From Ranitomeya imitator (Eukaryota): 64,000 nt of DNA. Under the pieces are notes generated by a model. That model made no database searches. It saw nothing but the letters and a program-made list of their open reading frames with translations, and was not told the DNA's origin. Made by a program: the position numbers and the translations under genes. The stretch spans positions 558,001 through 622,000 of the forward strand of contig NW_027193546.1 of the NCBI RefSeq assembly GCF_032444005.1, given 5' to 3'. Positions 7,157 to 53,703 of the stretch are shown here, piece after piece (the first letter of the stretch is position 1; each line of letters begins with the position of its first letter).

Positions 7157-7477
<321 letters not shown>

Positions 7478-7514
7478 TTAATGAGCAAAAACTGATTCCT
7501 GAGCCTCAGGGACT

Positions 7515-22900: not shown

Positions 22901-24103
22901 GGAGGTGATTTCTCTGATCATACAGCTCTGCGGGGAGGAGGTGGTGGCTCTGATCATACAGCTCTGCGGGGAGGAGGTGGTGGTACTGATCATACAGCTG
23001 TGCGGGGAGGAGGTGATTTCTCTGATCATACAGCTCTGCAGGGAAGAGGTGGTGGCTCTGATCATACAGCTCTGCGGGGAGGAGGAGGTGGCACTGATCA
23101 TACAGCTCTGCGGGGAGGAGGTGGTGGCACTGATCATACAGCTCTGCGGGGAGGAGGTGGTGGCACTGATCATACAGCTCTGCGGGGAGGAGGTGGTGGC
23201 ACTGATCATACAGCTCTGCGGGGAGGAGGAGGTGGCACTGATCATACAGCTCTGCGGGGAGGAGGTGGTGGCACTGATCATACAGCTCTGCGGGGAGGAG
23301 GAGGTGGCACTGATCATACAGCTCTGCGGGGAGGAGGAGGTGGCACTGATCATACAGCTCTGCGGGGAGGAGGTGGTGGCACTGATCATACAGCTCTGCG
23401 GGGAGGAGGTGATTTCTCTGATCATACAGCTCTGCAGGGAGGAGGTGGTGGTACTGATCATACAGCTGTGCGGGGAGGAGGTGATTTCTCTGATCATACA
23501 GCTCTGCAGGGAGGAGGTGGTGGCACTGATCATACAGCTCTGCGGGGAGGAGGTGGTGGCACTGATCATACAGCTCTGCGGGGAGGAGGTGGTGGCTCTG
23601 ATCATACAGCTCTGCGGGGAGGAGGAGGTGGCACTGATCATACAGCTCTGCGGGGAGGAGATGGTGGCTCTGATCATACAGCTCTGCGGGGAGGAGGTGG
23701 TGGCTCTGATCATACAGCTCTGCGGGGAGGAGGAGGTGGCACTGATCATACAGCTCTGCGGGAAGGAGGTGGTGGCACTGATGATACAGCTCTGCGGGGA
23801 GGAAGTGATGGCACTGATCATACAGCTCTGCGGGGAGGAGATGGTGGCTCTGATCATACAGCTCTGTGGGGAGGAGGTGGTGGCTCTGATCATACAGCTC
23901 TGCGGGGAGGAAGTGATGGCACTGATCATACAGCTCTGCGGGGAGGAGGTGGTGGCACTGACGATACAGCTCTGCGGGGAGGAAGTGGTGGCACTGATCA
24001 TACAGCTCTGCGGGGAGGAGGTGGTGGCACTGATCATACAGCTCTGCGGGGAGGAGGTGGTGGCACTGATCATACAGCTCTGCGGGGAGGAGGTGGTGGC
24101 TCT
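10962..24103. repeat. 36-bp minisatellite (~365 copies) with higher-order structure, derived from the H1 3' processing signal
   Basis: Consensus GGGGAGGAGGTGGTGGC(A/T)CTGATCATACAGCTCTGC with 37- and 39-bp variants. The last repeat merges into the H1 stem-loop. Copy number estimated as length/36. Confidence 0.97.
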
Positions 24104-24113
24104 TATAAGAGCC
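24098..24113 (-). terminator. H1 histone 3' stem-loop
   Basis: Minus strand AAA-GGCTCTTATAAGAGCC-ACCAC, then CAGAGCTGTA (HDE) 15 nt downstream. Copy at 48119-48134. Confidence 0.95.
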
Positions 24114-24141
24114 TTTGTGGTAACAGAACAGGGGCTGCAGC

Positions 24142-24780
24142 TTATTTCTTAGCCGCGGGCTTCTTGGCTTTCGCAGCCTTCTTAGCCGGACTCTTGGCGG
24201 GTTTGGCCGCCTTCTTAGCCGGACTCTTCGTCACCTTCTTGGGCTTGGGAGCGGCTTTCGGCTTCTTGGGGCTCTTGGCCGCTTTCTTGGCCGCTGCGGG
24301 CTTCTTGGCCTTTTTCGGGCTCTTCTTGGCCGCAGTCGGAGCCTTCTTGGGCTTCTTCGGAGATTTGGCGGCTTTCTTGGCAGCAGCGGGTTTCTTAGGT
24401 TTGGCCGCAGCTGCTGGCTTCGTCTTGGCCACTTTGTCCTTCGTCTCCTGCTTCTTGTTCAGCTTGAAGGACCCGGAGGCGCCGCTGCCTTTCACCTGGA
24501 GGAGGGCGCCCTTGGTGACCAGAGCCTTGACGGCCAGCTTCAGGCGGCTGTTGTTCTTCTCTACATCGTATCCTCCAGCAGACAGAGCCTTCTTCAGGGC
24601 GGCCAGAGACACCCCGCTGCGCTCCTTGGAGGCGGACACGGCTTTCACGATCAGCTCGGAGACGCTGGGGCCGGAGGGTTTATTGCTCTTCTTGGCAGCA
24701 GATTTCTTCGGCTGCTTCTTGGATTTGGCGGCCGGTTCTGCGGGAGGGGGAGCGGCGGCTGGCGCGGTCTCTGCCATCAT
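24142..24780 (-). CDS. H1: Linker histone H1 (somatic type)
   Basis: MMAETAPAA..., globular domain [27 protein letters not shown]...[12 protein letters not shown], and a K/A/P-rich tail. The start may be the second ATG (24777). Confidence 0.97.
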
Positions 24781-24849
24781 GTGCTGCTGAAGCTAAATGA
24801 AAATATTTCTTGATAGGAAGGAAAACACTGAGGCCCGAGCTGGAGGCGC

Positions 24850-24990
24850 CTGTTATATGTGCAGGCTTACTGCGCACTGATTGGCTGCTGAGCAGCACCG
24901 TCCTGAGCTTCTATTGGCTGACACTGGACACAGGCCCCGCCCCCTCCCAGCTGAGTCCGAGTGAAGCTCCGCTCTCCCCTTGTGCTTCCC
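24850..24990 (-). promoter_or_regulatory. H1 promoter (TATA, two CCAAT, GC box, possible variant H1 box)
   Basis: CATATAA on the minus strand at 24853-24859, ATTGG near 24880 and 24914, GGGGCGGGG near 24935-24944, AAGCACA near 24981 (canonical H1 box is AAACACA). Confidence 0.65.
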
Positions 24991-25781
24991 TGCCCGGGAT
25001 AAAAGCCCTTTACCGGCTAACACCGGACAGCAGAGCGCGATTCCTCCGTCGCCTCCCCTTCTCCAACATCTCCACCGGCCATTTGTAGCCGTCACTAGCA
25101 GAGATGCCGGGAAAGAGCGGAGAGGAAATCCCGGGATCATCGCCGCCGTCCTCCCGATCTGCACATCACTGTGTATCCGGGGAGATAAATCTGCTGCGGG
25201 AGCTCGTTCCTCCTATTCCCGGCTCCTGTCACCATCACAGGGATCTTTACTCCTATGTCTATCGCACAGGAAGCTGATTGTACGATGTGGGGACGAGCTG
25301 GAGCTGCTGACAACCCAGAAGGGTAACACAGGCGACGGCCTCCGCTGACTGCCACCTCCCTGACCTGTGGTGTCACTGTACCCCGTATGTGCATAGGATT
25401 GGGGGGACACGTGTTCCACATCAGTAGATGATCCACATCGGTGGCTGATTGCAATCACCTGCCTGATATCGTGTCTTACCCAGTGTGAAGCTGTGACCGC
25501 TGCGGCCTGTCATGGTGCGAAGAGCTCTGATGAGGCGACAGCTGCACACTGCGACTCCCCAACCAAACACATAAACATCTCCGGGGAGAAAACTGAAATA
25601 TTAATGGATTTATGTGACCCCCACTATTGTGTAAAAGGGGAATATTGGGAGAAAAGCGGAGACACAAAATCCAGCGTCTACACAGAGAACACAGCTGTAC
25701 ATAGTATATATAGTGCACAACATCACATCTGCACAGCCCAGATCAGCAGTGTAATAAGTGTCACTGATACTAGAGGAGAGG

Positions 25782-25989
25782 GTACAGTATATACAGCAGA
25801 GTGTACAGTATATACAGCAGAGTACACAGTATATAGAGCAGAGTGTACAGTATATACAGCAGTGTGCACAGTATATAGAGCCAGTGTGTACAGTACATAC
25901 AGCAGTGTGTACAGTATATAGAGCAGTGTGTAAAGTATATACAGCAGTGTGTACAATTTATAGACCAGAGTGTACAGTATATAGAGCAG
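25782..25989. repeat. 21-bp minisatellite (~10 copies)
   Basis: Unit GTACAGTATATACAGCAG(A/T)GT. Copy at ~49803-50010. Confidence 0.85.
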
Positions 25990-26366
25990 TCTCCCCTCTC
26001 TTCTTCTTTCTCTCTCTCTCCCTCTTTCTTAATCTCTATTTCTCTCTCCTCTCTTTCATTATTTCCTTCTCTCCTTTCTCTCTTCGCTCTCCTCTCTTTC
26101 TTTCTCTCTTCTTTTTTCTCTAAATCTTTCTCTCACTCTTACTCTTTCTCCCTTTCTATTTCTCTCTCTCCCTCTCTTTCCCTTGCTTTCTCTTTTTCTT
26201 ACTTTATATCTATCTCTCTCCTTCTCTCTTTCTTTATCTCTCTTCTCTCTACTTCTCTCTCTCTCTCTTTATGTCTCTTTGTCTCTCTCTTTCTCCCTTT
26301 CTTTCTCTCTATCTCCTTCTTTCTCATTCTCTCTCTTTCACTTTATCTCTCTCTTTCTCTCTCTCA
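25990..26366. repeat. CT-rich low-complexity tract
   Basis: Almost pure pyrimidine on the plus strand, ending CTCTCAG. Related tracts at ~27545-27855, ~50011-50389 and ~51568-51878. Confidence 0.9.
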
Positions 26367-26677
26367 GGGAGAGATTATCAATCCTTCATGTCAGCAGTGC
26401 ACCTCTCCAAAATGAGGCAGATGTACTAGATTTTCTAGGCACCGCCATCTGCACGTGGGGTGCTGCTGTAATCCCTGTCATCATCCTCGTTTTTCCTCTC
26501 CACGTTTCCATATCCAGCCAAGTGATCGCTGGGCCCAGTATTCTCATCAGCATTGCCGATACTTCGAGCTGTAGCAAAGGAGAAGGCACAAGTGATGATA
26601 ACCCGCCTCTATGTGCCCTCAAGTGTCTCCGCTGTGGTGCGGGATGATATGCTATGGAAGGTTAATAATCAATAATT

Positions 26678-27369
26678 GTGTCCTTCCTACAGGCTCTGGT
26701 GCCCCATGGAATGAAAGGTTTCCCCAGGAGGGCGGTGGTAAAGATGTTTAATGACTTGCTAAGGAATGGTCGCATGCAAAAACTCCAAGACTCGGACACC
26801 GTGCTGTCCCAGATTTTGGAGATGACGTGCAGTGACTTGGATTGGGAGGTGAAGGTGAACGCATTGGACCTGGCACATTCCTATATGTCCCAAACATTGG
26901 AGATGGGACCGTCCCTAACGTGTCCTTACACTATAGGGCTGCCATCTAGCAGAAGCTCAGGTTCCATCTCCGACGCTCTGGTTACATGTGAATGAGTCGG
27001 GCTTTTTCCGGCCTTATTGACTTGTCTGTGTGACTGTGACCGGTCAGTGGCATCAAAGGCGTGTGAAATCCTGCTCGCTGTGAAGCCCAAACTGTGCAAT
27101 GGGGACACTGATCCCTCCGAAGAGTATGGAAGAGACTGGCTGGAGCACACGATAAAAGAGAAGCAAATGGCAGGCGGGGACGGTGCTGGGGCCGGCAGGG
27201 TCGCCCACCAGATTGGGCCACTGGTGTCATACAGAAGATGGATTTGGATAACATAAAATGTCCCCTTCCGAAAAACAGCGATCATGTACACGAAACTCCC
27301 CGGTCACTGCTGCAGGACGTCAAAGCAACCTTATGGGGGGAAGAAATGCACGATGCAGATTGCTACTGA
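26678..27369 (+). pseudogene. BRAT1: BRAT1 C-terminal fragment, copy A (stop plus frameshifts)
   Basis: GFPRRAVVKMF...DLDWEVKVNALDLA...CPYTIGLP...CDCDRSVASKACEILL...DADCY* matches the recalled BRAT1 C-terminus (EGFPRRAVMQVF, DLDWEVRAQGLELA, DCDRPVAQKSCDLL, EADCY*). TGA at 26993 and indels after ~27190. Confidence 0.85.
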
Positions 27370-28170
27370 TGCGGAAGTTTATGGTACTTTTCTGCTGCAG
27401 ATTTCACTGCGGAAATGCCTTTTGTGCTGTAATTTGTAGTGGATCCAACCTGTGTTTTTCTTTTTTTACTACAGTGCCCTACTGGGACCCAGAAGCCCTC
27501 CTGGCCATCCAACTGCTACTCAGGCGCCAATTTCTAAGAAAGATTTATCTCCTCTCTTTCTTTCTCTTTCTCTAAATCTTTCTCTCACTCTTACCCTTTT
27601 CCCCTTTCTATTTCTCTCTCACCCTCTCTTTCTCTTGCTTTCTCTTTCTCTTTTTTCTCACTTTATCTCTATCTTTCTCTCTCCTTGTCTCTTTCTTCAT
27701 CTCTATTTCTTCTCTCTCTACTTATCNNNNNNNNNNNNNNNNNNNNNNNNNNNNNNNNNNNNNNNNNNNNNNNNNNNNNNNNNNNNNNNNNNNNNNNNNN
27801 NNNNNNNNNNNNNNNNNNNNNNNNNNNNNNNNNNNNNNNNNNNNNNNNNNNNNNNCCCAGGGAGAGATGATCAATCCTTCATGTCAGCAGTGCACCTCTC
27901 CAAAATGAGGCAGATGTACTAGATTTTCCAGGCACCGCCATCTGTACGTGCGGTGCTGCTGTAATCCCTGTCATCATCCTCGTTTTTCCTCTCCACGTTT
28001 CCATATCCAGCCAAGTGATCGCTGGGCCCAGTATTCTCATCAGCATTGCCGATACTTCGAGCTATAGCTAAGGAGAAGGCACAAGTGATGATAACCCGCC
28101 TCTATGTGCCCTCAAGTGTCTCCGCTGTGGTGCGGGATGATATGCTATGGAAGGTTAATAATCAATAATT

Positions 28171-28863
28171 GTGTCCTTCCTACAGGCTCTGATGCCCCAT
28201 GTAATGAAAGGTTTCCCCAGGAGGGCGGTGGTAAAGGTGTTTACTAACTTGCTAAGGAATGGTCGCATGCAAAAACTCCAAGACTCGGACACCGTGCTGT
28301 CCCAGATTTTGGAGATGACGTGCAGTGACTTGGATTGGGAGGTGAAGGTGAACGCATTGGACCTGGCACATTCCTATATGTCCCAAACATTGGAGATGGG
28401 ACCGTCCCTAACGTGCCCTTACACTATAGGGCTGCCATCTAGCAGAAGTTCAGGTTCCATCTCCGACGCTCTGGTTACATGTGAATGAGTCGGGCTTTTT
28501 CCGGCCTTATTGACTTGTCTGTGTGACTGTGACCGGCCAGTGGCATCAAAGGCGTGTGAAATACTTCTCGCTGTGAAGCCCAATCTGTGCAATGGGGACA
28601 CTGATCCCTCCGAAGAGTATGGAAGAGACTGGCTGGAGCACACGATAAAAGAGAAGCAAATGGCAGGCGGGGACGGTGCTGGGGACCGGCAGGGTCGCCC
28701 ACCAGAATGGGCCACTGGGGTCATAAAGAAGATGGATTTGGATAACATAAAATGTTCCCTGCCGAAATACAGCGATTATGTACACGAGACTCCCCGGTCA
28801 CTGCTGCAGGACGTCAAAGCCACCTTATGGGGGGAAGAAATGCACGATGCAGATTGCTACTGA
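28171..28863 (+). pseudogene. BRAT1: BRAT1 C-terminal fragment, copy B (single in-frame TGA)
   Basis: One continuous frame of 231 codons ending RSLLQDVKATLWGEEMHDADCY*, interrupted only by TGA at 28486-28488. Confidence 0.88.
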
Positions 28864-29499
28864 TGCGGAAGTTTAAGGGACTTTTCTGCTGCAGATCTCA
28901 TTGCGGAAATGCCTTTTGTGCTGTGATTTGTAGTGGATCCAACCTGTTTTTTTCCTACAGTGTCCTACTGGGACCCAGAAGCCCTCCTGGCCATCCGACA
29001 GCTACTCAGGCCCCAATTTCGAAGAAGCACGTCCTGGTTATAAGAAAGCAAATGCCTTTGGCACTATAGAGGGTGATGTAGTAGGGATTATTTTTCTATT
29101 TTGGTTTGCTTCCAGTACAGTTTTCACATTAAATCAGAACAATTAAAGAAAACAAACAAAAAAAAAACACGGCACATTCCTGTAATTTTGAATTAAAGCA
29201 TAACATTTTATATAAACAATGCATAAAAATGTGTCTTTCTGGGTTGTGATTGGTACATGAGGTAATGGCATAAATTAACATTCAATCACCTGATGTTGAT
29301 ATGATGAAAAATCTCTCCTAATTTCACTTGCTGCTTTCAACCGTGTATTGGGATTAACTGTGGGGGCATCATACATTGTGGAGAGTATGATCCACTCTGA
29401 TCTGGCATGGTCATGACAATAGTCGGGATACCTGCCACTACAGGGAAGGAAATTGTATATAATAAAGAAGCTGGAAAAATAATTGCAGAAACTGTACAA

Positions 29500-29645
29500 T
29501 GGGCGGGAAATTCAAACTTCCCAACAGTTCTGTGTTCAGCCAATCAGCAGAGTAAGGGAGGAGCTAATGATTCTGTAAGCCCCGCCCCGGATAGCGTCAT
29601 CTCTCCAGTTCTCTCTCTGGTCCATTCTTCCTCCATATAAAGGAG
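29500..29645 (+). promoter_or_regulatory. H4(+) promoter with E2F/CHR/Myb/CCAAT cassette and TATA
   Basis: GCGGGAAA-TTCAAA 29503-29516, CAACAG 29522, CCAAT 29540, GGTCCATT, CATATAAAGG ~29634. Confidence 0.7.
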
Positions 29646-29683
29646 CAGTCCCTGAGGCTCAGGAATCAGTTTTTGCTCATTGA

Positions 29684-30004
<321 letters not shown>

Positions 30005-30034
30005 TTGTGTTCTCTTCTGTCCTCACAACCCAAA

Positions 30035-30050
30035 GGCTCTTTTCAGAGCC
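30035..30050 (+). terminator. H4 histone 3' stem-loop
   Basis: AAA-GGCTCTTTTCAGAGCC-ACCCA. Copy at 54055-54070. Confidence 0.95.
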
Positions 30051-30829
30051 ACCCACATCTTCTAAGTGAGGGCTGCACCTGACTGCTAGGATCTGATTTC
30101 TCTGCTTTGGTGATGTCGCTGTAATGTTAGAACACTCATCGGTGCCAACGTTACGCTCCGAATACTGAATAGTCCCAAGGATATCCTGACGTGGAAAGAC
30201 TAAACGGCTTACCCGAAGCAGATCCCTCTACAGCTCTAATCAGGGGGGTGTTCAGGGCGGTTTCCAAATGTAGGTTAATATTCTGTCTAGACATTTAATA
30301 TCCTGTTCTTATTGGGCGCTGATTAGTAGATTTATGGGGGATATATATCCGCACTGGGCCGCAGTGATAATTTCCTGATCAGATCCGTGTACAGGGAATG
30401 TGGCTGTAGGAGGCAGCTGGATAGATGGACGCCCTGTGTGTCATCACATAGGGTACGGAGACTCCTATGTGATGACCACGTCCTGGACACTAATGTTTCG
30501 GGTGGATGGCGCCTCTGAAGACTATTATAACCTCCTCAGAATAATGATGGGCTGTTTGAGGTCTGATAGCCACGGCTGCGCGTTTTGAGGTCCTGTCATG
30601 TATTTATATATATCCGGTGTGTGCAGTGTATGGGGGGACACAGGTGTTGGTTCTGTTCCCTACAGCTCCTGTCCTGTATATGTATATACAAAGCGTATAC
30701 ATTGTGTGCAGTGTATGGGGGACACAGCGCTGCCGGGGCCTGGGGTGAAGGTGCCGCATCTGTGGATACTCTGGTAAAGAAAAGATCAGCTGGAAAACGG
30801 CACGTAAGGAGTTAAACGGGAGAGGAAAG

Positions 30830-31307
30830 ACGGGCAACAAAATTAATAAAGGGGATGGGAGAACTACAATACCCAGATAGATTAGCGAAATTAGGATTAT
30901 TTAGTCTAGAAAAAAGACGACTGAGGGGCGATCTAATAACCATGTATAAGTATATAAGGGGACAATACAAATATCTCGCTGAGGATCTGTTTATACCAAG
31001 GAAGGTGACGGCACAAGGGGGCATTCTTTGCGTCTGGAGGAGAGAAGGTTTTTCCACCAACATAGAAGAGGATTCTTTACTGTTAGGGCAGTGAGAATCT
31101 GGAATTGCTTGCCTGAGGAGGTGGTGATGGCGAACTCAGTCGAGGGGTTCAAGAGAGGCCTGGATGTCTTCCTGGAGCAGAACAATATTGTATCATACAA
31201 TTAGGTTCTGTAGAGGGACGTAGATCTGGGGATTTGTTGTGATGGAGTGTGGGCTGAACTGGATGGACAAATGTCTTTTTTCGGCCTTACTAACTATGTT
31301 ACTATGT
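30830..31307 (+). mobile_element. CR1 LINE 3' fragment (same family as 8001-8517)
   Basis: GELQYPDRLAKLGLFSLEKRRLRGDLITMYKY..., frameshifted, with the same TAACTATGTTACTATGT tail. Confidence 0.9.
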
Positions 31308-31700
31308 ACATCACTGAAGGCTGAGCGTTACCAAGGTTTCTCGCTCATTGTCTGATCACAGAATCCGTTGGGGAATTTGAATTCCCCGCTCATAATCTCC
31401 GGAGGATTGTTACAGGTCACTGATAGCGACAACCATCCCCCACCCCCTTACTGCGGGACCTGCTAACTACATGTAGACCTCACCGCGGAGTATCAGACAC
31501 TAAGGAGGGGACATTTCCTGCGAGCTTGGCAGACGACACTCCACCTGAGGGTCTGAGACTTCATGTGGGATTGACCCATTCATCTCCTGTTATTCTGTGG
31601 ATATGTGCACCAACAATGGCGGCAATGGTGTATGAACTATCAGCCTCATGCGAGGACCCCCGAGATAGGCGGCGCCGGCTCTTGTGGTGACGGTGTGGGT

Positions 31701-31716
31701 GGCTCTTAGAAGAGCC
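31701..31716 (-). terminator. H2A histone 3' stem-loop
   Basis: Minus strand AAA-GGCTCTTCTAAGAGCC-ACCCA, followed by CAAGAGCCGG. Copy at 55721-55736. Confidence 0.95.
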
Positions 31717-31745
31717 TTTGGTTTTGTAGAGATTGGCGGCAGCGC

Positions 31746-32138
31746 TCACTTGCTCTTGCTCGCCTTGCTGCTCTCGGTCTTCTTGGGCAGCAGCACGGCC
31801 TGGATGTTGGGCAGGACGCCCCCCTGGGCAATGGTCACCCCACCCAGCAGCCTGTTCAGCTCCTCGTCATTGCGCACCGCCAGCTGCAGGTGACGGGGGA
31901 TGATGCGGGTCTTCTTGTTGTCCCGGGCAGCATTGCCGGCCAATTCCAGGATCTCAGCGGTCAGATACTCCAGCACAGCGGCCAGATAGACCGGAGCGCC
32001 GGCGCCGACTCTCTCAGCGTAGTTGCCCTTGCGGAGAAGCCTGTGCACACGGCCGACTGGGAACTGCAGTCCTGCCCGGGATGAGCGGGTCTTGGCCTTA
32101 GCACGGACCTTTCCTCCTTGTTTGCCGCGTCCAGACAT
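31746..32138 (-). CDS. H2A: Histone H2A (replication-dependent)
   Basis: 130-aa canonical H2A with an amphibian-type tail [10 protein letters not shown]. Confidence 0.99.
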
Positions 32139-32929
32139 GATGCCGATAACTAATGACGGAAAATCGTGTAGAGAAGAGTCTGTGCTGTGTCGCCTTATAT
32201 AGTCCGTTGCTCCGCCCTCCTCTCCTGTCGTTGGACGGATCTGAAGATGAAAATGGAGAAGAGTATTGGAGATCCACCAATGAGCTACAGAGGGCGGAGC
32301 TTATTATTGCTCCTTTCTCAAATGAGTTTCTCACCCAATAGAAAACGTTCGCTTTGGACAGAATAGATAAGGGGTGAAAACAGATATCTGTCCTGGAGCA
32401 GAAGGAAATGCAGAAATATTCTGTTGACTTGTTGTTTGCACTTGTTGGACTTGTGTCTTCTATCAGCCATATATTGCACTGACAGTCTGGCGGGTGAGGG
32501 GTTAATTCCTGTCAGGAGGAGGCTCCTCACTCACCCGCTTATTATCCTGTGCAGATCCCCTGTGGTGTCCGCGCTTATACTATCACAGCCTGACTGAGAC
32601 AAGTCTCCTATGTTCTGCCCGGAGCCTGATGTGACGCTGCCGGGTCTCGGGTGGGGGAAGTCGCCGCTTCTGTAAAGCGAGTGTGTAGTGGGGGGTCAGC
32701 ACACACGGACACTGAGGAGTTAAATGGAGGCGGATATTCCTGTATCTGGGATTGGTCGGCGCCTGCGGATGTCTCTCGCTCATTGGCTGATTACAGATCC
32801 GTTGCTGGTTTTGAATTCCCCGCTCAGTTTCTGCTCTTTGTCCGTCGGGTTTATTACCGGCCCCTTTGCTGGAGCGGCGATCGCTGATAATACCGGGTCC
32901 TGTCATCCCAGCTGTCTGCCCCCAAACAC

Positions 32930-33822
32930 CTCCGTGTCCTTGACCTGAGTGCACACCATTATCCTTGTTCATGTGATTTTTTGCTTGGTGTAGCACCGGT
33001 TTACCAGATGACGTCTGACATCTTCGCATACGACGACGCAACCAGTTCCAGCATCTTATCGCAAGTTTCAAACTCAAGTGAATTCTTGAAAACCCCTCCC
33101 CATGAGTTGAGGACGAGGGACTACGAGAATTAGCGACGAAAATTAATCTCATATGATTTACACTGCATAACTTTGGCAGAACATCATAAACAGGGCAAGA
33201 TCCCGAGAGGTCTTAGGTGCAACCTGCGCCCAACACTTTTTTCTGAAGATCCCGATTACTGTGACAAATACAAGAGAATACTAAATAAATGTTCTTTAGA
33301 CATCATTATTCTGACCATTGAATTTCTACAAAAGGCTATTACGGAAACAAAGGACAGTATTAGAGCAATTGAAACACAACTATCTTCTACATTGGCATCC
33401 ACAGACTCTTACTTTTCGCTGCTCCGGACAGTATTCCCTTCATCGCCTCTGGTTGCCTTGTAAATATTGTACATATTATATTTTATATTTTGGTGTATGT
33501 TTATTATTTTGTCTTTTTTGTTCTTATTCGTTTTCTATTACATATAATGTTATGTCACATACAGTTACTTATACTGTTTATTTGCTTTCCTAGTAACCCC
33601 ATGAATAAGACCCGGGAGGGTCGAAACGTCGGGTTTCTATCTACGAATTATCACAGTGGCAATTGTTGACTTGTTTTCGTGAATAAATCTGGCATATACC
33701 TTTTGCATCATACCAGTTTCGAGTGTGCGGTATTTTTTCTTCTACTATTAACTTGACCACACGGTCTGTTTTACCAGCACCTCCGTGTCCTTGACCTGAG
33801 TGCACACCATTATCCTTGTTCA
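32930..33822 (+). mobile_element. Truncated Penelope-like element, unit 2 copy
   Basis: Matches 888-1780 at +32042. Confidence 0.75.
33595..33635 (+). ncRNA. Minimal hammerhead ribozyme motif, unit 2 copy
   Basis: Identical to 1553-1593. Confidence 0.7.
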
Positions 33823-34471
33823 TGCCCCCAAACACGGGCGGGGATCGGTCGCCATTATTACTCTGGGGAGGTTATAATAACCTTCATAGGCGCCATCCAT
33901 CCGAAACATTAGTGTCCGGGACGTGGTCATCACATAGGAGTCTCCGTACCCGGTACACAGGGCGTCCATCTATCCAGCTGCCTCAGACAGCCACATTCCC
34001 TGTGAATATTCGCTGCCCTATTCACCCCACACGGATCTGATCAGGAGAATATTACTGTACAGCCCATTTCCCTGTAATTCCGTGTTCTATTTATTTTATA
34101 TATCAATAAGAAGAAACCGCATTTGTGCTGTGATGGGAGTCACCAGTACTTGGGGCATCTTACAGTCAGACTTGTGATCGGATCTCTCTGCACTGCAGTG
34201 GTTTTATCTCACGTCATATTAACCCTATGAGATCTATGGCATTCGTTTTACATTATTACATCTAGTGCTAGAGGATCCTATCCTGCAATTGTATTGGGAT
34301 ATTTCTCCCATGATTCGTTGTTCCCCTCCACATTCTCGGAACTTCTACATGTGGGCAAAACAGAATTCATTGTCTTTCCCACATCACACGCAACCCCCCA
34401 ACGAACCTATCCATTACAGGAAACGGCTGCCCACTCTCCTCAGTCCAAGTTCGCTGCCTCGGGGTAATCCT

Positions 34472-35270
34472 TGACACTCATCTCTCCTTCAAACCTCATA
34501 TCCAAGCCCTTTCCACTTCCTGCCGCCTTCAACTCAAAATATTTCAAGGATCTGTAGATTTCTAAACCAAGAATCTGCAAAAACCCTAGTCTATGCCCTC
34601 ATCATCTCCCGCCTGGACTACTGTAACCTCCTGCTCTGTGGCCTCCCCTCTAACACTCTCGCACCCCTCCTATCTATTCTAAACTCTCCTGCCCGACTAA
34701 CCAACCTGTCCCCCGCTATTCCCCGGCCTCTCCCCTCTGTCAATCCCTTCACTGGCTCCCCATTACCCAGAGACTCCAGTACAAAAGCCTAACCATGACA
34801 TACAAAGCCATCCACAAAATGTCTCCTTTATACATCTGTGACCTCCTCTCCCGGTACTTTCCTGCAACCTCCGATCCTCACAAGATCTCCTTCTCTACTC
34901 CCCTCTTATCTCCTCTTCCCACAATCGCATACAAGATTTCTCTTGCGCATCACCCCTACTCTGGAACCCTCTACCACAACACATCAGACTCTCACCTACC
35001 ATGGAAACCTTCAAAAAGAGCCTAAAGACCCACCTCTTCCGACAAGCCTACAACCTGCAGTAACCACCACTGATCGACCAGCTCTACCTTCACCTACTGT
35101 ATCCTCATCCATCCATTGTAGATTGCGAGCCCTCGTGGGCAGGGTCCTCTCTCCTCCTGTACCAGTTATGACTTGTATTGTTCAAGATCATTGTACCTGT
35201 TATTATGTATACCCCTCCTCACATGTAAAGCGCCATGGAATAAATGGCGCTATAATAATAAATAATAATA
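34472..35270 (+). mobile_element. L2-type LINE 3' fragment, unit 2 copy
   Basis: Matches 2430-3228. Confidence 0.85.
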
Positions 35271-36344
35271 TTGCCCGAGAGCCGCCAGTCCTGACACTAG
35301 ATGAAGCGGGGGAAGAAAAGTGATAGAACAGAAGGACGATCAGTAACTGAGCAGGGATCCTGTGAGGAGGATGTGACGGCCGATAATGTAACTGCCTGAC
35401 CTGTGAGATCCTGACACCACAGGGTAATGTTCTGAGCAGGGACACTCCGCAATCTTCTACACATGATCCTACATTTCCCATCACAGACCTCCTGCCTGCA
35501 GCCGTAGGACTGATCTGTAATGGGGAGACATGGTGGGATCTGCTGGGAAGGGCAGAATTGGTCTTCCCTGAAATGTCTCTTGTAGGATATGTCCCTGACC
35601 AGTATATCGTCTCAACAATACGGATTGTGACGGGAAAGGGACGATCTGATCGTCTCCAGGTCAGACACACGGGAACATCACAGCATGTGGAGAACACGAA
35701 TCATTCTCTATATCCATGAGAGGAAACCGGAGCGGATACAGCGCCGCTAACCTGGAAATCTGCAGATTCCTGTGTGGGATGTAAGAGACCAATGATCGCT
35801 CAACACAAGCAGATTTCCCGATATCGGTCCTGGGACCAGGTGTTATATGAAGACAAAAGACGGAAAAAAGCGGGAACCGTAAACGTGTTACCATTGGAAA
35901 CATTAGCTCCTCCCTCTGCTGATTGGCTGAACACAGGACGGTTGGGGGTTTGAATTTCCCGCCGCTTCTAAATGTAATGACGTCACTTACACTGTAAAAA
36001 GAATCCAGATTAGGCTCTAGATCAACTCCACCACAAATGGCTCCTGTTACCTGAGAAACGAGAGTAATGAACTAATAAACGAGACCCCAGAATGCCGAGA
36101 TCTGTGCAGCAAGGAGTTAAATAAGAAGTCCCTGAATACACATCAACTCGCTGAGCAATGCCCAGATTATTCCTGAGATTTTCTCACCATCTCCCTCGTC
36201 ACCAGGCGCAGAGCCCCGGGCGGAGCGAGCAGACACCTCGGGGAGACGGGAGAGGACACCGGAGCAGTGTGGGTGGCTCTTATAGTGAGGGTGTGGGTGG
36301 CTCTTAGAAGAGCCTTTGGGGTGAGGAGCGGAGCACGGANNNNN

Positions 36345-36743
<399 letters not shown>

Positions 36744-37501
36744 TCAGTACAAGTAAGAAGAATAATGATCCTGCGCCTCCAAGAGCGGCGGAATTTATAG
36801 CCCGGCCATGCAGATGAGCACTGCTGTCAGACCGCCGTTCTATTGGGTGATGAAGTCATGTGACCAACAAGAACGTTAGACCACTGCAGCTGATTGGTGG
36901 TTTCCCAAATCATTGCTTCATCTTTGCAGCGGGGATGCTGTATAGCGATGTAAAACCCTGTATAATGCTCTATACATCTAAATAGTGCTGTGAAGCTCCA
37001 TATACCGCAGTGCACCCTCATATAGCGCTGTATGTGTTCATGTTCTATTTACCCTTCATAGTGCTGTTATTCATCTGAATAGTGCAGAGTACCCCCATAT
37101 ACTGCAACCTACTGACAAATGACTGTGCCACATTATGCAGGCAGTTACAGTACAGCGCCCGACATGTTACACTCCGTATAGTGCAGTAATATCTCCAGAT
37201 GGTGCTGGAAACCCCAGCTAGTCAGCTGTGCCAGGACTGCAAACCCTGTGAATTCAGTGAGATGTTTCGGTAGTAGCCGCACCCAGTTTTCTAGGAAGAG
37301 CCGGCTTCCCTCAGGAGCTGTGTCCCCTGTATAAACTGCACTTATCCCTCCTGTGTGTGATCTCAGTAACATGAAGCCGGATCAGTCACTTCAGCCACGA
37401 ATCTCTGCTCTGTGGTGACCGCAGTACAGTGGAGCACGGATCGTGTATAGTGACCTCTATATACCGCCTGGTGCAGTGTGAACCATCAGTGTGATCAGCG
37501 G

Positions 37502-37632
37502 TGCGGCTCTTAGGAGGAGGATGTGGGGGCTCTTAGAAGAGCCTTTGAGTGTGTGGACAGATGTGGAGGAGCGGAGTTTACAGTCCTGGCACAGCAGACT
37601 AGCCGCTTCCTGGATCTACGAGGAAACGGCCA
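37502..37632 (-). pseudogene. Decayed H2B 3' fragment with stem-loop, unit 2 copy
   Basis: Matches 5460-5590. Confidence 0.6.
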
Positions 37633-39198: not shown

Positions 39199-39519
<321 letters not shown>

Positions 39520-40028
39520 TTAATGAGCAAAAACTGATTCCTGAGCCTCAGGGACTGCACCTTTATATGGAGGGAGAATGGACCAGAGAGAGAACTGCAG
39601 AGATGACGCACTTCCGGGACGGGGCTTACAGAATCTACATTAGCTCCTCCCTTTCTCTGCTGATTGGCTAAATACTAAACTGTAGGGAAGTTTGATTTTC
39701 CCGCTCATTGCTCAGTTTCTGCAATTATCTTTCCAGCTTCTATTATGTGTAATTTCCTTCCCTTATGATTGAGGGTATCCTAAATATTGTCATTACTGTT
39801 CCAGATCATGGTGGATCATATCTTCCACAACAGATGATGCCCCCAGTTACCCTCCACACAGTATGATGCCTCCTACACAGTAAGATACCCACACAGCAGG
39901 ATGTCCCCACAGTTACTGTGTGGGGGTATAATACCCCCAGTAACTCCCCAAACAGTATGATGCCCTAAGTCCCCCCCACACACACACACACACACACTTT
40001 GATGCACCCACAGTTATCCCCTATACAA

Positions 40029-40545
40029 TGTAACATAGTAACATAGTTAGTAAGGCCGAAAAAATACATTTGTCCTTCCAGTTCAGCCTATATTCCATCA
40101 TAATAAATCCCCAGATCTACGTCCTTCTACAGAACCTAATAATTGTATGATACAATATTGTTCTGCTCCAGGAAGACATCCAGGCCTCTCTTGAACCCCT
40201 CGACTGAGTTCGCCATCACCACCTCCTCAGGCAAGCAATTCCAGATTCTCACTGCCCTAACAGTAAAGAATCCTCTTCTATGTTGGTGGAAAAACCTTCT
40301 CTCTTCCAGACGCAAAGAATGCCCCCTTGTGCCCGTCACCTTCCTTGGTATAAACAGATCCTCAGCGAGATATTTGTATTGTCCCCTTATATACTTATAC
40401 ATGGTTATTAGATCGCCCCGTCTTTTTTCTAGACTAAATAATCCTAATTTCGCTAACCTATCTGGGTATTGTAGTTCTCCCATTCCCTTTATTAATTTTG
40501 TTGGCCTCCTTTGTACTCTCTCTAGTTCCATTATATCCTTCCTGT
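40029..40545 (-). mobile_element. CR1 LINE 3' fragment, unit 2 copy
   Basis: Matches 8001-8517. Confidence 0.9.
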
Positions 40546-42171: not shown

Positions 42172-42756
<585 letters not shown>

Positions 42757-48801: not shown

Positions 48802-50700
48802 GTGCTGCTGACGCAAAATGAAAATATTTCCTGATAGGAAGGAAAACACTGAGGCCGGAGCTGGAGGCGCCTGTTATATGTACAGGCTTACTGCGCACTG
48901 ATTGGCTGCTGAGCAGCACCGTCCTGAGCTTCTATTGGCTGACACTGGACACAGGCCCCGCCCCCTCCCAGCTGAGTCCGAGTGAAGCTCCGCTCTCCCC
49001 TTGTGCTTCCCTGCCCGGGATAAAAGCCCTTTACCGGCTAACACCGGACAGCAGAGCGCGATTCCTCCGTCGCCTCCCCTTCTCCAACATCTCCACCGGC
49101 CATTTGTAGCCGTCACTAGCAGAGATGCCGGGAAAGAGCGGAGAGGAAATCCCGGGATCATCGCCGCCGTCCTCCCGATCTGCACCTCACTGTGTATCCG
49201 GGGAGATAAATCTGCTGCGGGAGCTCGTTCCTCCTATTCCCGGCTCCTGTCACCATCACAGGGATCTTTACTCCTATGTCTATCGCACAGGAAGCTGATT
49301 GTACGATGTGGGGACGAGCTGGAGCTGCTGACAACCCAGAAGGGTAACACAGGCGACGGCCTCCGCTGACTGCCACCTCCCTGACCTGTGGTGTCACTGT
49401 ACCCCGTATGTGCAGAGGATTGGGGGGACACGTGTTCCACACCAGTAGATGATCCACATCGGTGGCTGATTGCAATCACCTGCCTGATATCGTGTCTTAC
49501 CCAGTGTGAAGCTGTGACCGCTGCGGCCTGTCATGGTGCGAAGAGCTCTGATGAGGCGACAGCTGCACACTGCGACTCCCCAACCAAACACATAAACATC
49601 TCCGGGGAGAAAACTGAAATATTAATGGATTTATGTGACCCCCACTATTGTGTAAAAGGGGAATATTGGGAGAAAAGCGGAGACACAAAATCCAGCGTCT
49701 ACACAGAGAACACAGCTGTACATAGTTTATATAGTGCACAACATTACATCTGCACAGCCCAGATCAGCAGTGTAATAAGTGTCACTGATACTAGAGGAGA
49801 GGGTACAGTATATACAGCAGAGTGTACAGTATATACAGCAGAGTACACAGTATATAGAGCAGAGTGTACAGTATATACAGCAGTGTGCACAGTATATAGA
49901 GCCAGTGTGTACAGTACATACAGCAGTGTGTACAGTATATAGAGCAGTGTGTAAAGTATATACAGCAGTGTGTACAATTTATAGACCAGAGTGTACAGTA
50001 TATAGAGCAGTCTCCCCTCTCTTCTTCTTTCTCTCTCTCTCTCCCTCTTTCTTAATCTCTATTTCTCTCTCCTCTCTTTCATTATTTCCTTCTCTCCTTT
50101 CTCTCTTCGCTCTCCTCTCTTTCTTTCTCTCTTCTTTTTTCTCTAAATATTTCTCTCACTCTTACTCTTTCTTCCTTTCTATTTCTCTCTCTCCCTCTCT
50201 TTCCCTTGCTTTCTCTTTTTCTTACTTTATATCTATCTCTCTCCTTCTCTCTTTCTTTATCTCTCTTCTCTCTACTTCTCTCTCTCTCTCTTTATGTCTC
50301 TTTGTCTCTCTCTTTCTCCCTTTCTTTCTCTCTATCTCCTTCTTTCTCATTCTCTCTCTTTCACTTTATCTCTCTCTTTCTCTCTCTCAGGGAGAGATTA
50401 TCAATCCTTCATGTCAGCAGTGCACCTCTCCAAAATGAGGCAGATGTACTAGATTTTCTAGGCACCGCCATCTGCACGTGGGGTGCTGCTGTAATCCCTG
50501 TCATCATCCTCGTTTTTCCTCTCCACGTTTCCATATCCAGCCAAGTGATCGCTGGGCCCAGTATTCTCATCAGCATTGCCGATACTTCGAGCTGTAGCAA
50601 AGGAGAAGGCACAAGTGATGATAACCCGCCTCTATGTGCCCTCAAGTGTCTCCGCTGTGGTGCGGGATGATATGCTATGGAAGGTTAATAATCAATAATT

Positions 50701-51392
50701 GTGTCCTTCCTACAGGCTCTGGTGCCCCATGGAATGAAAGGTTTCCCCAGGAGGGCGGTGGTAAAGATGTTTAATGACTTGCTAAGGAATGGTCGCATGC
50801 AAAAACTCCAAGACTCGGACACCGTGCTGTCCCAGATTTTGGAGATGACGTGCAGTGACTTGGATTGGGAGGTGAAGGTGAACGCATTGGACCTGGCACA
50901 TTCCTATATGTCCCAAACATTGGAGATGGGACCGTCCCTAACGTGCCCTTACACTATAGGGCTGCCATCTAGCAGAAGCTCAGGTTCCATCTCCGACGCT
51001 CTGGTTACATGTGAATGAGTCGGGCTTTTTCCGGCCTTATTGACTTGTCTGTGTGACTGTGACCGGTCAGTGGCATCAAAGGCGTGTGAAATCCTGCTCG
51101 CTGTGAAGCCCAAACTGTACAATGGGGACACTGATCCCTCCGAAGAGTATGGAAGAGACTGGCTGGAGCACACGATAAAAGAGAAGCAAATGGCAGGCGG
51201 GGACGGTGCTGGGGCCGGCAGGGTCGCCCACCAGATTGGGCCACTGGTGTCATACAGAAGATGGATTTGGATAACATAAAATGTCCCCTTCCGAAAAACA
51301 GCGATCATGTACACGAAACTCCCCGGTCACTGCTGCAGGACGTCAAAGCAACCTTATGGGGGGAAGAAATGCACGATGCAGATTGCTACTGA
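50701..51392 (+). pseudogene. BRAT1: BRAT1 C-terminal fragment, copy A, unit 2
   Basis: Matches 26678-27369. Confidence 0.85.
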
Positions 51393-52191
51393 TGCGGAAG
51401 TTTATGGTACTTTTCTGCTGCAGATTTCACTGCGGAAATGCCTTTTGTGCTGTAATTTGTAGTGGATCCAACCTGTGTTTTTCTTTTTTTACTACAGTGC
51501 CCTACTGGGACCCAGAAGCCCTCCTGGCCATCCAACTGCTACTCAGGCGCCAATTTCTAAGAAAGATTTATCTCCTCTCTTTCTTTCTCTTTCTCTAAAT
51601 CTTTCTCTCACTCTTACCCTTTTCCCCTTTCTATTTCTCTCTCACCCTCTCTTTCTCTTGCTTTCTCTTTCTCTTTTTTCTCACTTTATCTCTATCTTTC
51701 TCTCTCCTTGTCTCTTTCTTCATCTCTATTTCTTCTCTCTCTACTTATCTCCCTCTTTCTTTCTCTTTGTCTTTATCTCTCTTTCTTTCTCCTTTGCTTT
51801 CTCTCTCTCTCTCTCCTTCTTTCTCATTCTCTCTCGTTCACTCTCTCTCTCTTTGTCTTTATCTCTCCTTCTCTCTCCCAGGGAGAGATGATCAATCCTT
51901 CATGTCAGCAGTGCACCTCTCCAAAATGAGGCAGATGTACTAGATTTTCCAGGCACCGCCATCTGTACGTGCGGTGCTGCTGTAATCCCTGTCATCATCC
52001 TCGTTTTTCCTCTCCACGTTTCCATATCCAGCCAAGTGATCGCTGGGCCCAGTATTCTCATCAGCATTGCCGATACTTCGAGCTATAGCTAAGGAGAAGG
52101 CACAAGTGATGATAACCCGCCTCTATGTGCCCTCAAGTGTCTCCGCTGTGGTGCGGGATGATATGCTATGGAAGGTTAATAATCAATAATT

Positions 52192-52884
52192 GTGTCCTTC
52201 CTACAGGCTCTGATGCCCCATGTAATGAAAGGTTTCCCCAGGAGGGCGGTGGTAAAGGTGTTTACTAACTTGCTAAGGAATGGTCGCATGCAAAAACTCC
52301 AAGACTCGGACACCGTGCTGTCCCAGATTTTGGAGATGACGTGCAGTGACTTGGATTGGGAGGTGAAGGTGAACGCATTGGACCTGGCACATTCCTATAT
52401 GTCCCAAACATTGGAGATGGGACCGTCCCTAACGTGCCCTTACACTATAGGGCTGCCATCTAGCAGAAGTTCAGGTTCCATCTCCGACGCTCTGGTTACA
52501 TGTGAATGAGTCGGGCTTTTTCCGGCCTTATTGACTTGTCTGTGTGACTGTGACCGGCCAGTGGCATCAAAGGCGTGTGAAATACTTCTCGCTGTGAAGC
52601 CCAATCTGTGCAATGGGGACACTGATCCCTCCGAAGAGTATGGAAGAGACTGGCTGGAGCACACGATAAAAGAGAAGCAAATGGCAGGCGGGGACGGTGC
52701 TGGGGACCGGCAGGGTCGCCCACCAGAATGGGCCACTGGGGTCATAAAGAAGATGGATTTGGATAACATAAAATGTTCCCTGCCGAAATACAGCGATTAT
52801 GTACACGAGACTCCCCGGTCACTGCTGCAGGACGTCAAAGCCACCTTATGGGGGGAAGAAATGCACGATGCAGATTGCTACTGA
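52192..52884 (+). pseudogene. BRAT1: BRAT1 C-terminal fragment, copy B, unit 2
   Basis: Matches 28171-28863. Single TGA at 52507-52509. Confidence 0.88.
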
Positions 52885-53703
52885 TGCGGAAGTTTAAGGG
52901 ACTTTTCTGCTGCAGATCTCATTGCGGAAATGCCTTTTGTGCTGTGATTTGTAGTGGATCCAACCTGTTTTTTTCCTACAGTGTCCTACTGGGACCCAGA
53001 AGCCCTCCTGGCCATCCGACAGCTACTCAGGCCCCAATTTCGAAGAAGCACGTCCTGGTTATAAGAAAGCAAATGCCTTTGGCACTATAGAGGGTGATGT
53101 AGTAGGGATTATTTTTCTATTTTGGTTTGCTTCCAGTACAGTTTTCACATTAAATCAGAACAATTAAAGAAAACAAACAAAAAAAAACACGGCACATTCC
53201 TGTAATTTTGAATTAAAGCATAACATTTTATATAAACAATGCATAAAAATGTGTCTTTCTGGGTTGTGATTGGTACATGAGGTAATGGCATAAATTAACA
53301 TTCAATCACCTGATGTTGATATGATGAAAAATCTCTCCTAATTTCACTTGCTGCTTTCAACCGTGTATTGGGATTAACTGTGGGGGCATCATACATTGTG
53401 GAGAGTATGATCCACTCTGATCTGGCATGGTCATGACAATAGTCGGGATACCTGCCGCTACAGGGAAGGAAATTGTATATAATAAAGAAGCTGGAAAAAT
53501 AATTGCAGAAACTGTACAATGGGCGGGAAATTCAAACTTCCCAACAGTTCTGTGTTCAGCCAATCAGCAGAGTAAGGGAGGAGCTAATGATTCTGTAAGC
53601 CCCGCCCCGGATAGCGTCATCTCTCCAGTTCTCTCTCTGGTCCATTCTTCCTCCATATAAAGGAGCAGTCCCTGAGGCTCAGGAATCAGTTTTTGCTCAT
53701 TGA

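What the first reader, a model, noticed from the sequence alone, without database searches (positions are those of the whole stretch)
26678..28863. BRAT1 C-terminus (INTS11-binding DCY tail) captured twice in each histone repeat
Seen: two tandem ~690-bp fragments, 1493 bp apart, encode the BRAT1 C-terminal ~230 aa through DADCY*. Both share the same in-frame TGA (26993, 28486), so the stop predates their duplication. Copy B is otherwise fully open. Known: the terminal DCY cysteine of BRAT1 inserts into the active site of INTS11, the Integrator endonuclease and paralog of CPSF73, which cleaves histone pre-mRNA. Inference: a host RNA 3'-processing regulator fragment has been amplified to histone-array copy number between the divergent H1 and H4 promoters. 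It is either a hitch-hiker or a source of regulatory RNA or peptide.
Basis: partly seen in the sequence, partly recalled or inferred. Interest (0 to 1): 0.7.

Follow-up and report, generated by a model that had tools for sequence, protein, structure and literature searches.

The report
Dead BRAT1 exon in histone repeats
Each histone gene repeat of this poison frog carries two decaying DNA copies of the last exon of the frog's own brat1 gene; they look like passengers multiplied with the array, not a working regulator.

Summary
Two tandem copies (A 26365-27540, B 27858-29026; 96% alike) of the brat1 terminal exon lie on the + strand between H1 (-) and H4 (+). Each copy also carries the end of the preceding intron and the start of the 3'UTR. 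The pair recurs in the next unit (50388-53047). Copy B matches human BRAT1 residues 604-821, ending in DADCY.

Both copies share a TGA where native frog BRAT1 has Arg, and both share a 21-bp in-frame deletion. Copy A also has a 1-bp deletion. The N gap (27727-27855) lies in the CT-rich spacer and crosses neither reading frame.

A protein tree places the copies beside native Ranitomeya imitator BRAT1, after the split from R. variabilis. Since capture, the copies' shared lineage took 14-16 amino-acid changes against 2 in the native gene, and 11 of the 16 fall at positions invariant in hyloid frogs. The coding part differs more between A and B than the intron-like flank does.

This fits a non-processed pseudo-exon that hitch-hiked in the array. 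dN/dS against the native gene could not be computed because the native DNA was not retrievable. The scan has reported this element before on other pieces of this genome (s1-271774), with the same verdict.

The parts
26365..26692 (+). Copy A, intron-like flank ending in a polypyrimidine tract and the AG acceptor
   Evidence: Homologous to copy B's flank at 98.2%. The last 35 aligned bases before the acceptor are 77% identical to the intron end in another frog's genomic contig L001; farther upstream identity is at background level.
26693..27369 (+). Copy A, brat1 terminal pseudo-exon: TGA at 26993-26995 and a 1-bp deletion after 27191
   Evidence: tblastn with native R. imitator BRAT1 (P0049) aligns aa 588-754 and 763-820 in two frames. 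Translation, indel.
27370..27540 (+). Copy A, 3'UTR-like tail
   Evidence: A/B homology continues for 163 aligned bases at 93% with an 8-bp indel. The first ~15 bases after the stop resemble L001.
27541..27857 (.). CT-rich microsatellite spacer that holds the assembly gap 27727-27855
   Evidence: Tandem repeats at 27559-27704 and the N run. A like CT-rich tract (25996-26365) directly precedes copy A.
27858..28185 (+). Copy B, intron-like flank with acceptor
28186..28863 (+). Copy B, brat1 terminal pseudo-exon: one TGA at 28486-28488, otherwise open to the stop at 28861-28863, ending in DADCY
   Evidence: PDB phmmer hits to human BRAT1 604-692 and 698-821. 88% aa identity to native R. imitator BRAT1 588-820.
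28864..29026 (+). Copy B, 3'UTR-like tail; A/B homology ends at 29026
   Evidence: ATTAAA motifs at 29128-29197 lie beyond it.
50388..51563 (+). Copy A' in the next repeat unit
   Evidence: blastn, tblastn.
51877..53047 (+). Copy B' in the next repeat unit, identical to B over the compared stretch
   Evidence: blastn 100% over 1245 bp. Unit-to-unit identity is 99.95%.
24142..24780 (-). Histone H1 gene, left neighbour (context)
   Evidence: Pfam Linker_histone, E 9.5e-23.
29693..30004 (+). Histone H4 gene, right neighbour (context), with its 3' stem-loop at 30030-30075
   Evidence: ORF translation. Rfam RF00032.

Best explanation
This is a non-processed (DNA-level) pseudogene fragment.

Inferred history:
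1. At least 1.2 kb of the frog's own brat1 3' end was copied into the H1-H4 spacer of a histone repeat unit. The piece comprised the end of the last intron, the last coding exon and the start of the 3'UTR. This happened in the Ranitomeya imitator lineage, after its split from R. variabilis.
2. The insert lost constraint. It acquired a CGA-to-TGA type stop at an Arg codon, a 21-bp deletion and many replacements.
3. It was duplicated in tandem together with a CT-rich microsatellite, with a period of about 1.49 kb.
4. It was carried to array copy number by the unequal crossing-over and homogenisation that maintain the histone array.

It has no function of its own and is a passenger.

Shown here: its identity, the shared lesions, its placement in the tree, its faster protein change, and unit-to-unit near-identity. 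Inferred: the order of events, the mechanism of insertion and spread, and the absence of function.
For: Identity and extent:
- PDB hits to human BRAT1 604-821.
- Only native residues 588-820, the last exon, are present in the whole window.
- The intron end and acceptor were co-captured: 77% identity to another frog's intron end against background farther upstream. So this is not a retrocopy.
- The native gene sits elsewhere: a 33-kb gene next to an IQ-domain gene on a 227-Mb record.

Lesions:
- Shared TGA where all 17 native frog proteins aligned (from 16 species) have a residue. It is Arg in the dendrobatids, and the codon is CGA in L001.
- Shared 7-codon deletion.
- Frameshift in copy A.

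Rate:
- One search counts 13 shared copy changes against 2 native changes (Tajima chi-square 8.07, p 0.0045).
- With R. variabilis added, the table gives 14-16 against 2.
- 5 of the 16 fall at columns invariant in all 16 species and 6 more at columns invariant in 11 hyloids. Hyloid-invariant columns make up 48% of the alignment, so conserved positions are not spared.
- ML tree: the copies are sister to the R. imitator natives (support 98/92). Their stem is 0.065 against about 0 for the native tips.

A against B:
- Divergence is 1.8% in the intron-like flank, 3.0% in the coding part and 6.7% in the 3' tail.
- 12 nonsynonymous and 8 synonymous differences, compatible with neutral expectation (P 0.1-0.5).

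Spread: units are 99.95% identical while A and B are 96% alike, so the pair is amplified as part of the unit.

Annotation: no protein model containing this exon other than native BRAT1 was found in the protein searches.
Against: - Copy B keeps an intact acceptor, a single stop and an unchanged last six codons (HDADCY).
- A vs B gives NG86 dN/dS 0.43, below 1, though from only 20 differences and not significant.
- The upstream intron-like flank is the best conserved part between A and B, which is unexplained.
- A + strand TATA-like box near 25000 points toward the fragments.
- dS against the native exon could not be computed, because no native DNA was obtainable.
- The dating to after the imitator/variabilis split rests on one or two shared residues plus the tree.
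Confidence: 0.8

Rival explanations
1. Exonised terminal exon giving a non-coding RNA. Divergent transcription from the H1 promoter region, or from the TATA-like box near 25000, runs rightward and splices into the retained brat1 acceptor. It ends at a captured poly(A) signal. This would give an array-copy-number RNA that carries brat1 3' sequence, for example antisense or decoy material affecting native brat1.
For: - Both copies keep the polypyrimidine tract and AG.
- A TATA-like GGATAAAAGCC on the + strand lies about 150 bp beyond the H1 CCAAT boxes.
- ATTAAA occurs three times, 265-330 nt after copy B's stop.
- The intron-like flank is the least diverged part between A and B.
- An earlier first-reader note saw a promoter-like module too (s1-272003, unchecked).
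Against: - There is no transcript evidence of any kind.
- No Rfam family lies in the spacer.
- The candidate donor at 25322/25323 is weak and out of phase with the phase-0 acceptor (read).
- Retention of an acceptor is expected by default in a young copy.
- Sequence decay is uniform or worse in the exon.
Confidence: 0.1
2. A micropeptide with the INTS11-plugging tail. Copy B's ATG at 28657 opens a 68-codon ORF ending in DADCY. If translated, the product could bind the INTS11 active site and modulate Integrator or a related nuclease.
For: - The ORF is open in copy B and ends with the native tail.
- BRAT1 binding is reported to block the INTS11 active site (preprint 10.1101/2025.03.05.641556).
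- Solved complexes exist: 8uib, 8r22.
Against: - The ATG is the native internal Met, not a new start.
- Copy A has lost this frame.
- The tail block that is invariant in hyloid frogs carries 4 (B) to 6 (A) replacements plus G-to-E next to the tail.
- There is no promoter or transcript evidence.
- No such product is on record.
- The rest of the BRAT1 solenoid, which holds INTS9/INTS11, is absent.
Confidence: 0.03
3. Passenger with a side effect (not exclusive of the best explanation). The high-copy pseudo-exon acts as a donor for short ectopic gene conversion into the native brat1 last exon.
For: - The native-locus protein model from a second R. imitator assembly (P0148) differs from the reference native (P0049) at only 2 of 376 residues.
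- Both differences are the array residues (Q to P, L to R).
- Both fall at positions invariant in 11 hyloid natives.
Against: - Array-specific changes 5 codons away from each site are absent, so the conversion tracts would have to be very short.
- Consensus polishing with mis-mapped reads from the high-copy array could give the same picture.
- An old polymorphism present in the captured allele is also possible.
- No DNA of either native locus could be read.
Confidence: 0.15
4. Assembly artefact: brat1 sequence mis-joined into a collapsed histone repeat.
For: An N gap lies between the two copies, and CT-rich low-complexity DNA flanks them.
Against: - The pair recurs in a second unit without a gap at that place.
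- The copies differ from the native protein by 12% with specific lesions.
- A and B differ from each other by 4%.
- Other windows of the genome were noted to hold it (unchecked notes).
Confidence: 0.02

Closest known systems
Native BRAT1 (integrator complex assembly factor BRAT1), R. imitator XP_069590443.1 (P0049)
   Same: The fragment is 88% identical in protein to native residues 588-820. It has the same exon start and the same DADCY end.
   Different: Only the last exon is present. It has a premature TGA, a 7-codon deletion, 14-16 shared replacements and, in A, a frameshift. It lies in a histone array, not beside the IQ-domain neighbour gene.
Gene-derived pseudogene carried in every unit of a tandem gene array, e.g. 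the CDC27 pseudogene in the human rDNA intergenic spacer (from my own knowledge, not checked here)
   Same: An unrelated host gene fragment sits in the spacer of a tandemly repeated gene family and is amplified and homogenised with the unit, with no known function.
   Different: This one is a non-processed single-exon fragment with an intron flank, duplicated in tandem inside the unit, in a histone array and not an rDNA array.
Non-processed (duplicated) pseudogene fragments from segmental duplication or repair-mediated filler DNA
   Same: Intron and UTR flanks are co-copied, there is no poly(A) tail or intron loss, and disabling mutations have accumulated.
   Different: The copy number is set by the host array. 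The insertion mechanism is unknown: no terminal inverted repeats were found around it.
Transposon-mediated gene-fragment capture (Helitron, Pack-MULE type)
   Same: A single exon with partial intron was moved at the DNA level.
   Different: No transposon hallmarks were found: no inverted termini and no Pfam transposase or helicase hit in ORFs from the spacer on either side of the fragments. No repeat library was available, so this is not excluded.

Membership tests
BRAT1 protein family (functional member) | Significant sequence homology to BRAT1 | tested here: met
   Human BRAT1 chains 8uib_T and 8r22_A, E 1.4e-16 and 6e-14. 88% identity to R. imitator BRAT1. The local Pfam copy lacks the BRAT1 model PF28344: native fragments do not hit it either.
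BRAT1 protein family (functional member) | Full-length HEAT/ARM solenoid of about 820 aa that embraces INTS9/INTS11 | tested here: not met
   tblastn of the 820-aa native protein finds only residues 588-820 anywhere in the 64-kb window.
BRAT1 protein family (functional member) | Uninterrupted reading frame | tested here: not met
   TGA at 26993 and 28486 in both copies. 1-bp deletion in A. No upstream coding exon.
BRAT1 protein family (functional member) | Conserved C-terminal tail ending in DADCY | tested here: met
   Copy B ends HDADCY, as all 17 native frog proteins aligned do. Copy A does so only in the ancestral frame. The adjacent conserved block is mutated.
BRAT1 protein family (functional member) | Purifying selection on the coding sequence | tested here: not met
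   - Relative-rate test: 13-16 changes against 2 (p 0.001-0.005).
- Changes hit invariant columns at or above their frequency in the alignment.
- Tree stem 0.065 against 0.
- A vs B dN/dS 0.43 from 20 differences, not distinguishable from neutral.
- dS against the native gene was not computable.
Non-processed pseudogene fragment | Intron or flanking genomic sequence of the parent gene retained, and no poly(A) tract | tested here: met
   The acceptor and the last ~35 intron bases are homologous to another frog's brat1 intron end. No A-run follows the 3' tail. Comparison with the species' own intron was not possible.
Non-processed pseudogene fragment | Disabling lesions shared by descent, and a functional parent gene elsewhere | tested here: met
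   Shared TGA and shared 21-bp deletion. The native gene is annotated on another large record with the expected neighbour.
Expressed or exonised pseudogene (regulatory RNA) | Transcripts covering the fragment | not testable with these tools
Exact-product look-ups found nothing, which is not evidence of absence.

The most novel reading that the evidence does not exclude
Copy B is a ready-made terminal exon, with an acceptor and possibly a poly(A) signal, present once per histone unit. Divergent transcription from the H1 promoter region would be spliced into it. That would yield an abundant S-phase-linked RNA, and from the internal ATG a 68-residue peptide with the BRAT1 DADCY tail. The peptide could plug INTS11 and so couple Integrator activity to histone-array transcription. 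Separately, the array copies may feed short gene-conversion tracts into the native brat1 exon.
Probability: 0.04. Interest if true: 0.7.

Novelty: new member of a known kind. Interest (0 to 1): 0.22.

Why it matters
As a passenger it matters mainly for practical reasons.
- It is a dated marker for when this histone array unit was last remodelled and amplified in Ranitomeya.
- It shows that tandem histone arrays, like rDNA arrays, can multiply foreign gene fragments many-fold.
- It is a trap for annotation, read mapping and consensus polishing of the real brat1 gene. The two array-type residues in one native-locus model may be an example of this.

If the fragment were expressed, it would place a piece of an Integrator assembly factor under histone-array control. 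Nothing here supports that.

Tried and rejected
- Native brat1 DNA. The look-up of encoding contigs returned gene tables but no DNA for R. imitator (two assemblies) and D. tinctorius, and no record for Anomaloglossus. So no dS or dN/dS against the parent exon and no mapping of the capture boundaries.
- Word searches with the pieces found only Logan fragments from other frogs, no Ranitomeya transcripts.
- Exact look-ups of the two ATG-started ORFs of copy B found nothing.
- Pfam. There was no hit for the pieces, but the local library lacks the BRAT1 model, since native fragments miss it too. ORFs from the spacer on either side of the fragments (24980-25920 and 28752-29640) gave nothing.
- Inverted-repeat search for transposon termini: only weak chance pairs.
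- The bacterial-type promoter/terminator scan is irrelevant to a vertebrate.
- Selenocysteine reading of the TGA was rejected: native proteins have Arg there, and no Rfam family beyond histone stem-loops reached threshold in 24000-43100.
- In-frame fusion from an upstream exon was rejected: the only plausible donor, at 25322/25323, is weak and in the wrong phase.
- I could not confirm in the searchable library that the penultimate Cys sits in the INTS11 active site. I found only that BRAT1 blocks the active site. The Cys detail is from my own memory of the 2024 structure papers.

Full report
WHAT IS THERE

The window holds tandem histone repeat units with offsets of 32,042 and 24,021 bp. The difference in length comes from a 36-bp satellite behind H1. 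In the 4.9-kb spacer between H1 (24142-24780, minus strand; Pfam Linker_histone) and H4 (29693-30004, plus strand; stem-loop RF00032 at 30030-30075) lie two plus-strand copies of one segment. Copy A is at 26365-27540 and copy B at 27858-29026. They are 96.1% identical over 1177 columns.

The pair recurs in the next unit (50388-51563 and 51877-53047). B' is identical to B there, and the units are 99.95% alike overall. The window begins downstream of this spacer in the first unit. So 'twice per unit' is seen in two units here.

THE ASSEMBLY GAP

The N run at 27727-27855 lies in the CT-rich microsatellite that separates the copies. A like CT-rich tract (25996-26365) directly abuts the start of copy A. 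Neither BRAT1-like reading frame crosses the gap. Copy A's coding-like part (26693-27369) and copy B's (28186-28863) are each contiguous.

Only the stated spacing of 1493 bp depends on the estimated gap length. The same alignment anchors in the next unit are 1491 bp apart (coordinates only). I neither filled the gap nor read its letters from other copies.

IDENTITY

The pieces of copy B on either side of its internal stop were searched apart.
- Piece 28171-28485 matches human BRAT1 chains (8uib_T, 8r22_A) at residues 604-692, E 1.4e-16.
- Piece 28489-28860 matches residues 698-821, up to the last residue, E 6e-14.

A word search with a frog BRAT1 query gave native BRAT1 proteins of many frogs. 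They include Ranitomeya imitator (P0049), Dendrobates tinctorius, Phyllobates terribilis and Anomaloglossus. A cluster look-up added R. variabilis (P0149) and a second R. imitator model (P0148).

tblastn of the 820-residue R. imitator protein against the whole window finds only residues 588-820. Identity is 88% for copy B, and copy A aligns in two frames. So only the terminal coding exon is present.

DNA-LEVEL CAPTURE

The coding-like part starts right after a polypyrimidine tract and AG. A genomic Logan contig of another frog (L001, found through P0001) has the same exon start.
- The last 35 aligned intron bases are 77% identical to the copies.
- Farther upstream, identity falls to background level.
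- The exon is 81% identical.

The first bases after the stop also align. There is no poly(A) tract. So this is a non-processed fragment: intron end, last exon and start of the 3'UTR.

The native R. imitator gene is a 33-kb gene beside an IQ-domain gene on a 227-Mb record. That is the usual BRAT1 neighbourhood as I know it from other vertebrates.

LESIONS

Both copies have TGA at the same codon (26993-26995 and 28486-28488). All dendrobatid natives have Arg there, and L001 has CGA. A C-to-T change at a CpG is therefore the likely origin. This is an inference, since the species' own codon was not read.

Both copies lack the same 21 bp (7 native codons) near the exon start. Copy A also has a 1-bp deletion after 27191.

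WHEN IT WAS CAPTURED

An ML tree was built from the exon's protein sequence, with the copies read through with X at the breaks, in a script only. It places A+B as sister to the R. imitator natives. R. variabilis, D. tinctorius, Phyllobates and Anomaloglossus lie successively outside (supports 98/92, 92/88, 99/96). The copies share with R. imitator a D-to-A change that R. variabilis and the outgroups lack. So the capture is specific to the R. imitator lineage. This rests on few sites.

CONSTRAINT

Relative rate:
- With D. tinctorius, Phyllobates and Anomaloglossus as outgroups, 13 changes are shared by A and B against 2 on the native R. imitator branch (Tajima chi-square 8.07, p 0.0045).
- With R. 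variabilis added, the table gives 14-16 against 2. The two doubtful changes are discussed below.
- By hand from that table, chi-square is 9.0 to 10.9.

Where the changes fall: of the 16 shared changes, 5 are in columns invariant in all 16 frog species compared, and 6 more are in columns invariant in 11 hyloids. Hyloid-invariant columns make up 109 of 225 columns. So conserved positions are not avoided. The block just before the tail is invariant in most hyloid natives. It carries 4 replacements in B and 6 in A, and there is also a G-to-E change four residues before DADCY.

Copy-specific changes: copy A has 8 further private replacements and copy B has 4.

Tree: the copies' stem is 0.065 changes per site and their tips 0.017-0.038. 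The native R. imitator tips are about 0 and R. variabilis is 0.032.

A against B at the DNA level:
- Divergence is 1.8% in the intron-like flank, 3.0% in the coding part and 6.7% in the 3' tail.
- The 20 coding differences split into 12 nonsynonymous and 8 synonymous, NG86 dN/dS 0.43.
- Under mutation models with kappa 1-4 and CpG excess 1-10, the neutral nonsynonymous share is 0.68-0.77. The observed 0.60 is not distinguishable from that (P 0.10-0.48). This test has little power.

Taken together, this is the pattern of a sequence released from selection at or soon after capture.

WHAT COULD NOT BE TESTED

- DNA of the native exon could not be fetched for any dendrobatid. So dN/dS against the parent gene and the exact capture boundaries remain open.
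- No protein model containing this exon other than native BRAT1 turned up in the three word searches or in the HMMER search of representatives.
- Exact look-ups of copy B's two ATG-started ORFs found nothing.
- None of these blanks shows absence.

THE FUNCTIONAL IDEA

The literature at hand supports two points. BRAT1 binds INTS9/INTS11 (PMC9418311 and 10.1101/2023.08.10.552743). BRAT1 binding blocks the INTS11 active site (10.1101/2025.03.05.641556, citing Sabath et al. 2024). That the penultimate Cys reaches the metal site is my recollection of the 2024 structure papers and was not verified here.

The step from INTS11 to its paralogue CPSF73, and so to histone mRNA cleavage, is only a thematic association. 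A tail peptive would also lack the solenoid that holds the nuclease dimer, and the tail's conserved neighbourhood has decayed.

Some features keep a small door open for exonisation:
- intact acceptors in both copies;
- a plus-strand TATA-like box at 24998-25008 pointing toward the copies;
- three ATTAAA motifs 265-330 nt behind copy B's stop;
- the oddly low divergence of the intron-like flank.

The only plausible donor, at 25322/25323, is weak and out of phase with the phase-0 acceptor.

AN ODDITY

The native-locus model from a second R. imitator assembly (P0148, CAJ0945962.1) differs from the reference native protein at just 2 of 376 residues. Both differences are the array residues (Q to P and L to R; codons CCG and CGG in the window copies). 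Both lie at hyloid-invariant positions. Array-specific changes five codons away from each are absent. Three readings are open and need native-locus reads to separate:
- short ectopic gene conversion from the array;
- polishing with mis-mapped reads from the high-copy array;
- an old polymorphism in the captured allele.

EARLIER NOTES OF THIS SCAN

The same element was reported on other pieces of this genome. One follow-up (s1-271774) called it a dead hitch-hiker in R. imitator. I reached the same verdict from my own tests. The species attribution fits my tree.

VERDICT

This is a young, lineage-specific, non-processed pseudo-exon multiplied by a tandem histone array, which is a new instance of a known kind of event. 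Interest is low to modest.

Noticed in passing
P0148 versus P0049 (native brat1 models of two R. imitator assemblies); window codons 28501-28503 and 28810-28812 in copy B: The two native models differ at only 2 of 376 residues, and both differences are the array-copy residues (Q to P, L to R) at hyloid-invariant positions. This could be gene conversion from the array, a polishing artefact or an old polymorphism.
   Followed up: partly
window 24998-25008 (+), with ATTGG boxes at 24881 and 24914: A TATA-like GGATAAAAGCC on the plus strand lies just beyond the H1 promoter and points toward the BRAT1 fragments. ORFs downstream (24980-25920) have no Pfam hit.
   Followed up: partly
window 25777-25989 and 25996-26365; 27541-27726: A 21-bp tandem repeat (about 10 copies) is followed by a CT-rich microsatellite directly upstream of copy A. 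The same kind of CT-rich tract follows copy A and runs into the assembly gap. So the 1.49-kb tandem duplication unit is microsatellite plus fragment.
   Followed up: partly
window 29361-30174 (+) versus 39025-39845 (-), also 6983-7803 (-): The H4 gene next to copy B lies in an 825-bp segment that is an inverted 93% duplicate of the unit's other H4 segment. Each unit therefore has two H4 genes in opposite orientation.
   Followed up: no
window 29128-29197 (+): Three ATTAAA motifs lie 265-330 nt after copy B's stop and beyond the end of A/B homology. This may be the captured brat1 poly(A) region, present only behind copy B.
   Followed up: no
window 26365-26692 versus 27858-28185: The intron-like flank is less diverged between A and B (1.8%) than the coding part (3.0%) or the 3' tail (6.7%). 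The numbers are small and the cause is unknown.
   Followed up: no
window 30855-31094 (+): A short ORF resembles the C-terminal tail of a CR1/LINE-type reverse transcriptase, between H4 and H2A. There was no Pfam hit at E 0.001.
   Followed up: no
window 36275-36319 (-), beside gap 36340-36624: A histone 3' stem-loop hit sits directly next to an assembly gap. The gene it belongs to may lie partly in the unread stretch.
   Followed up: no
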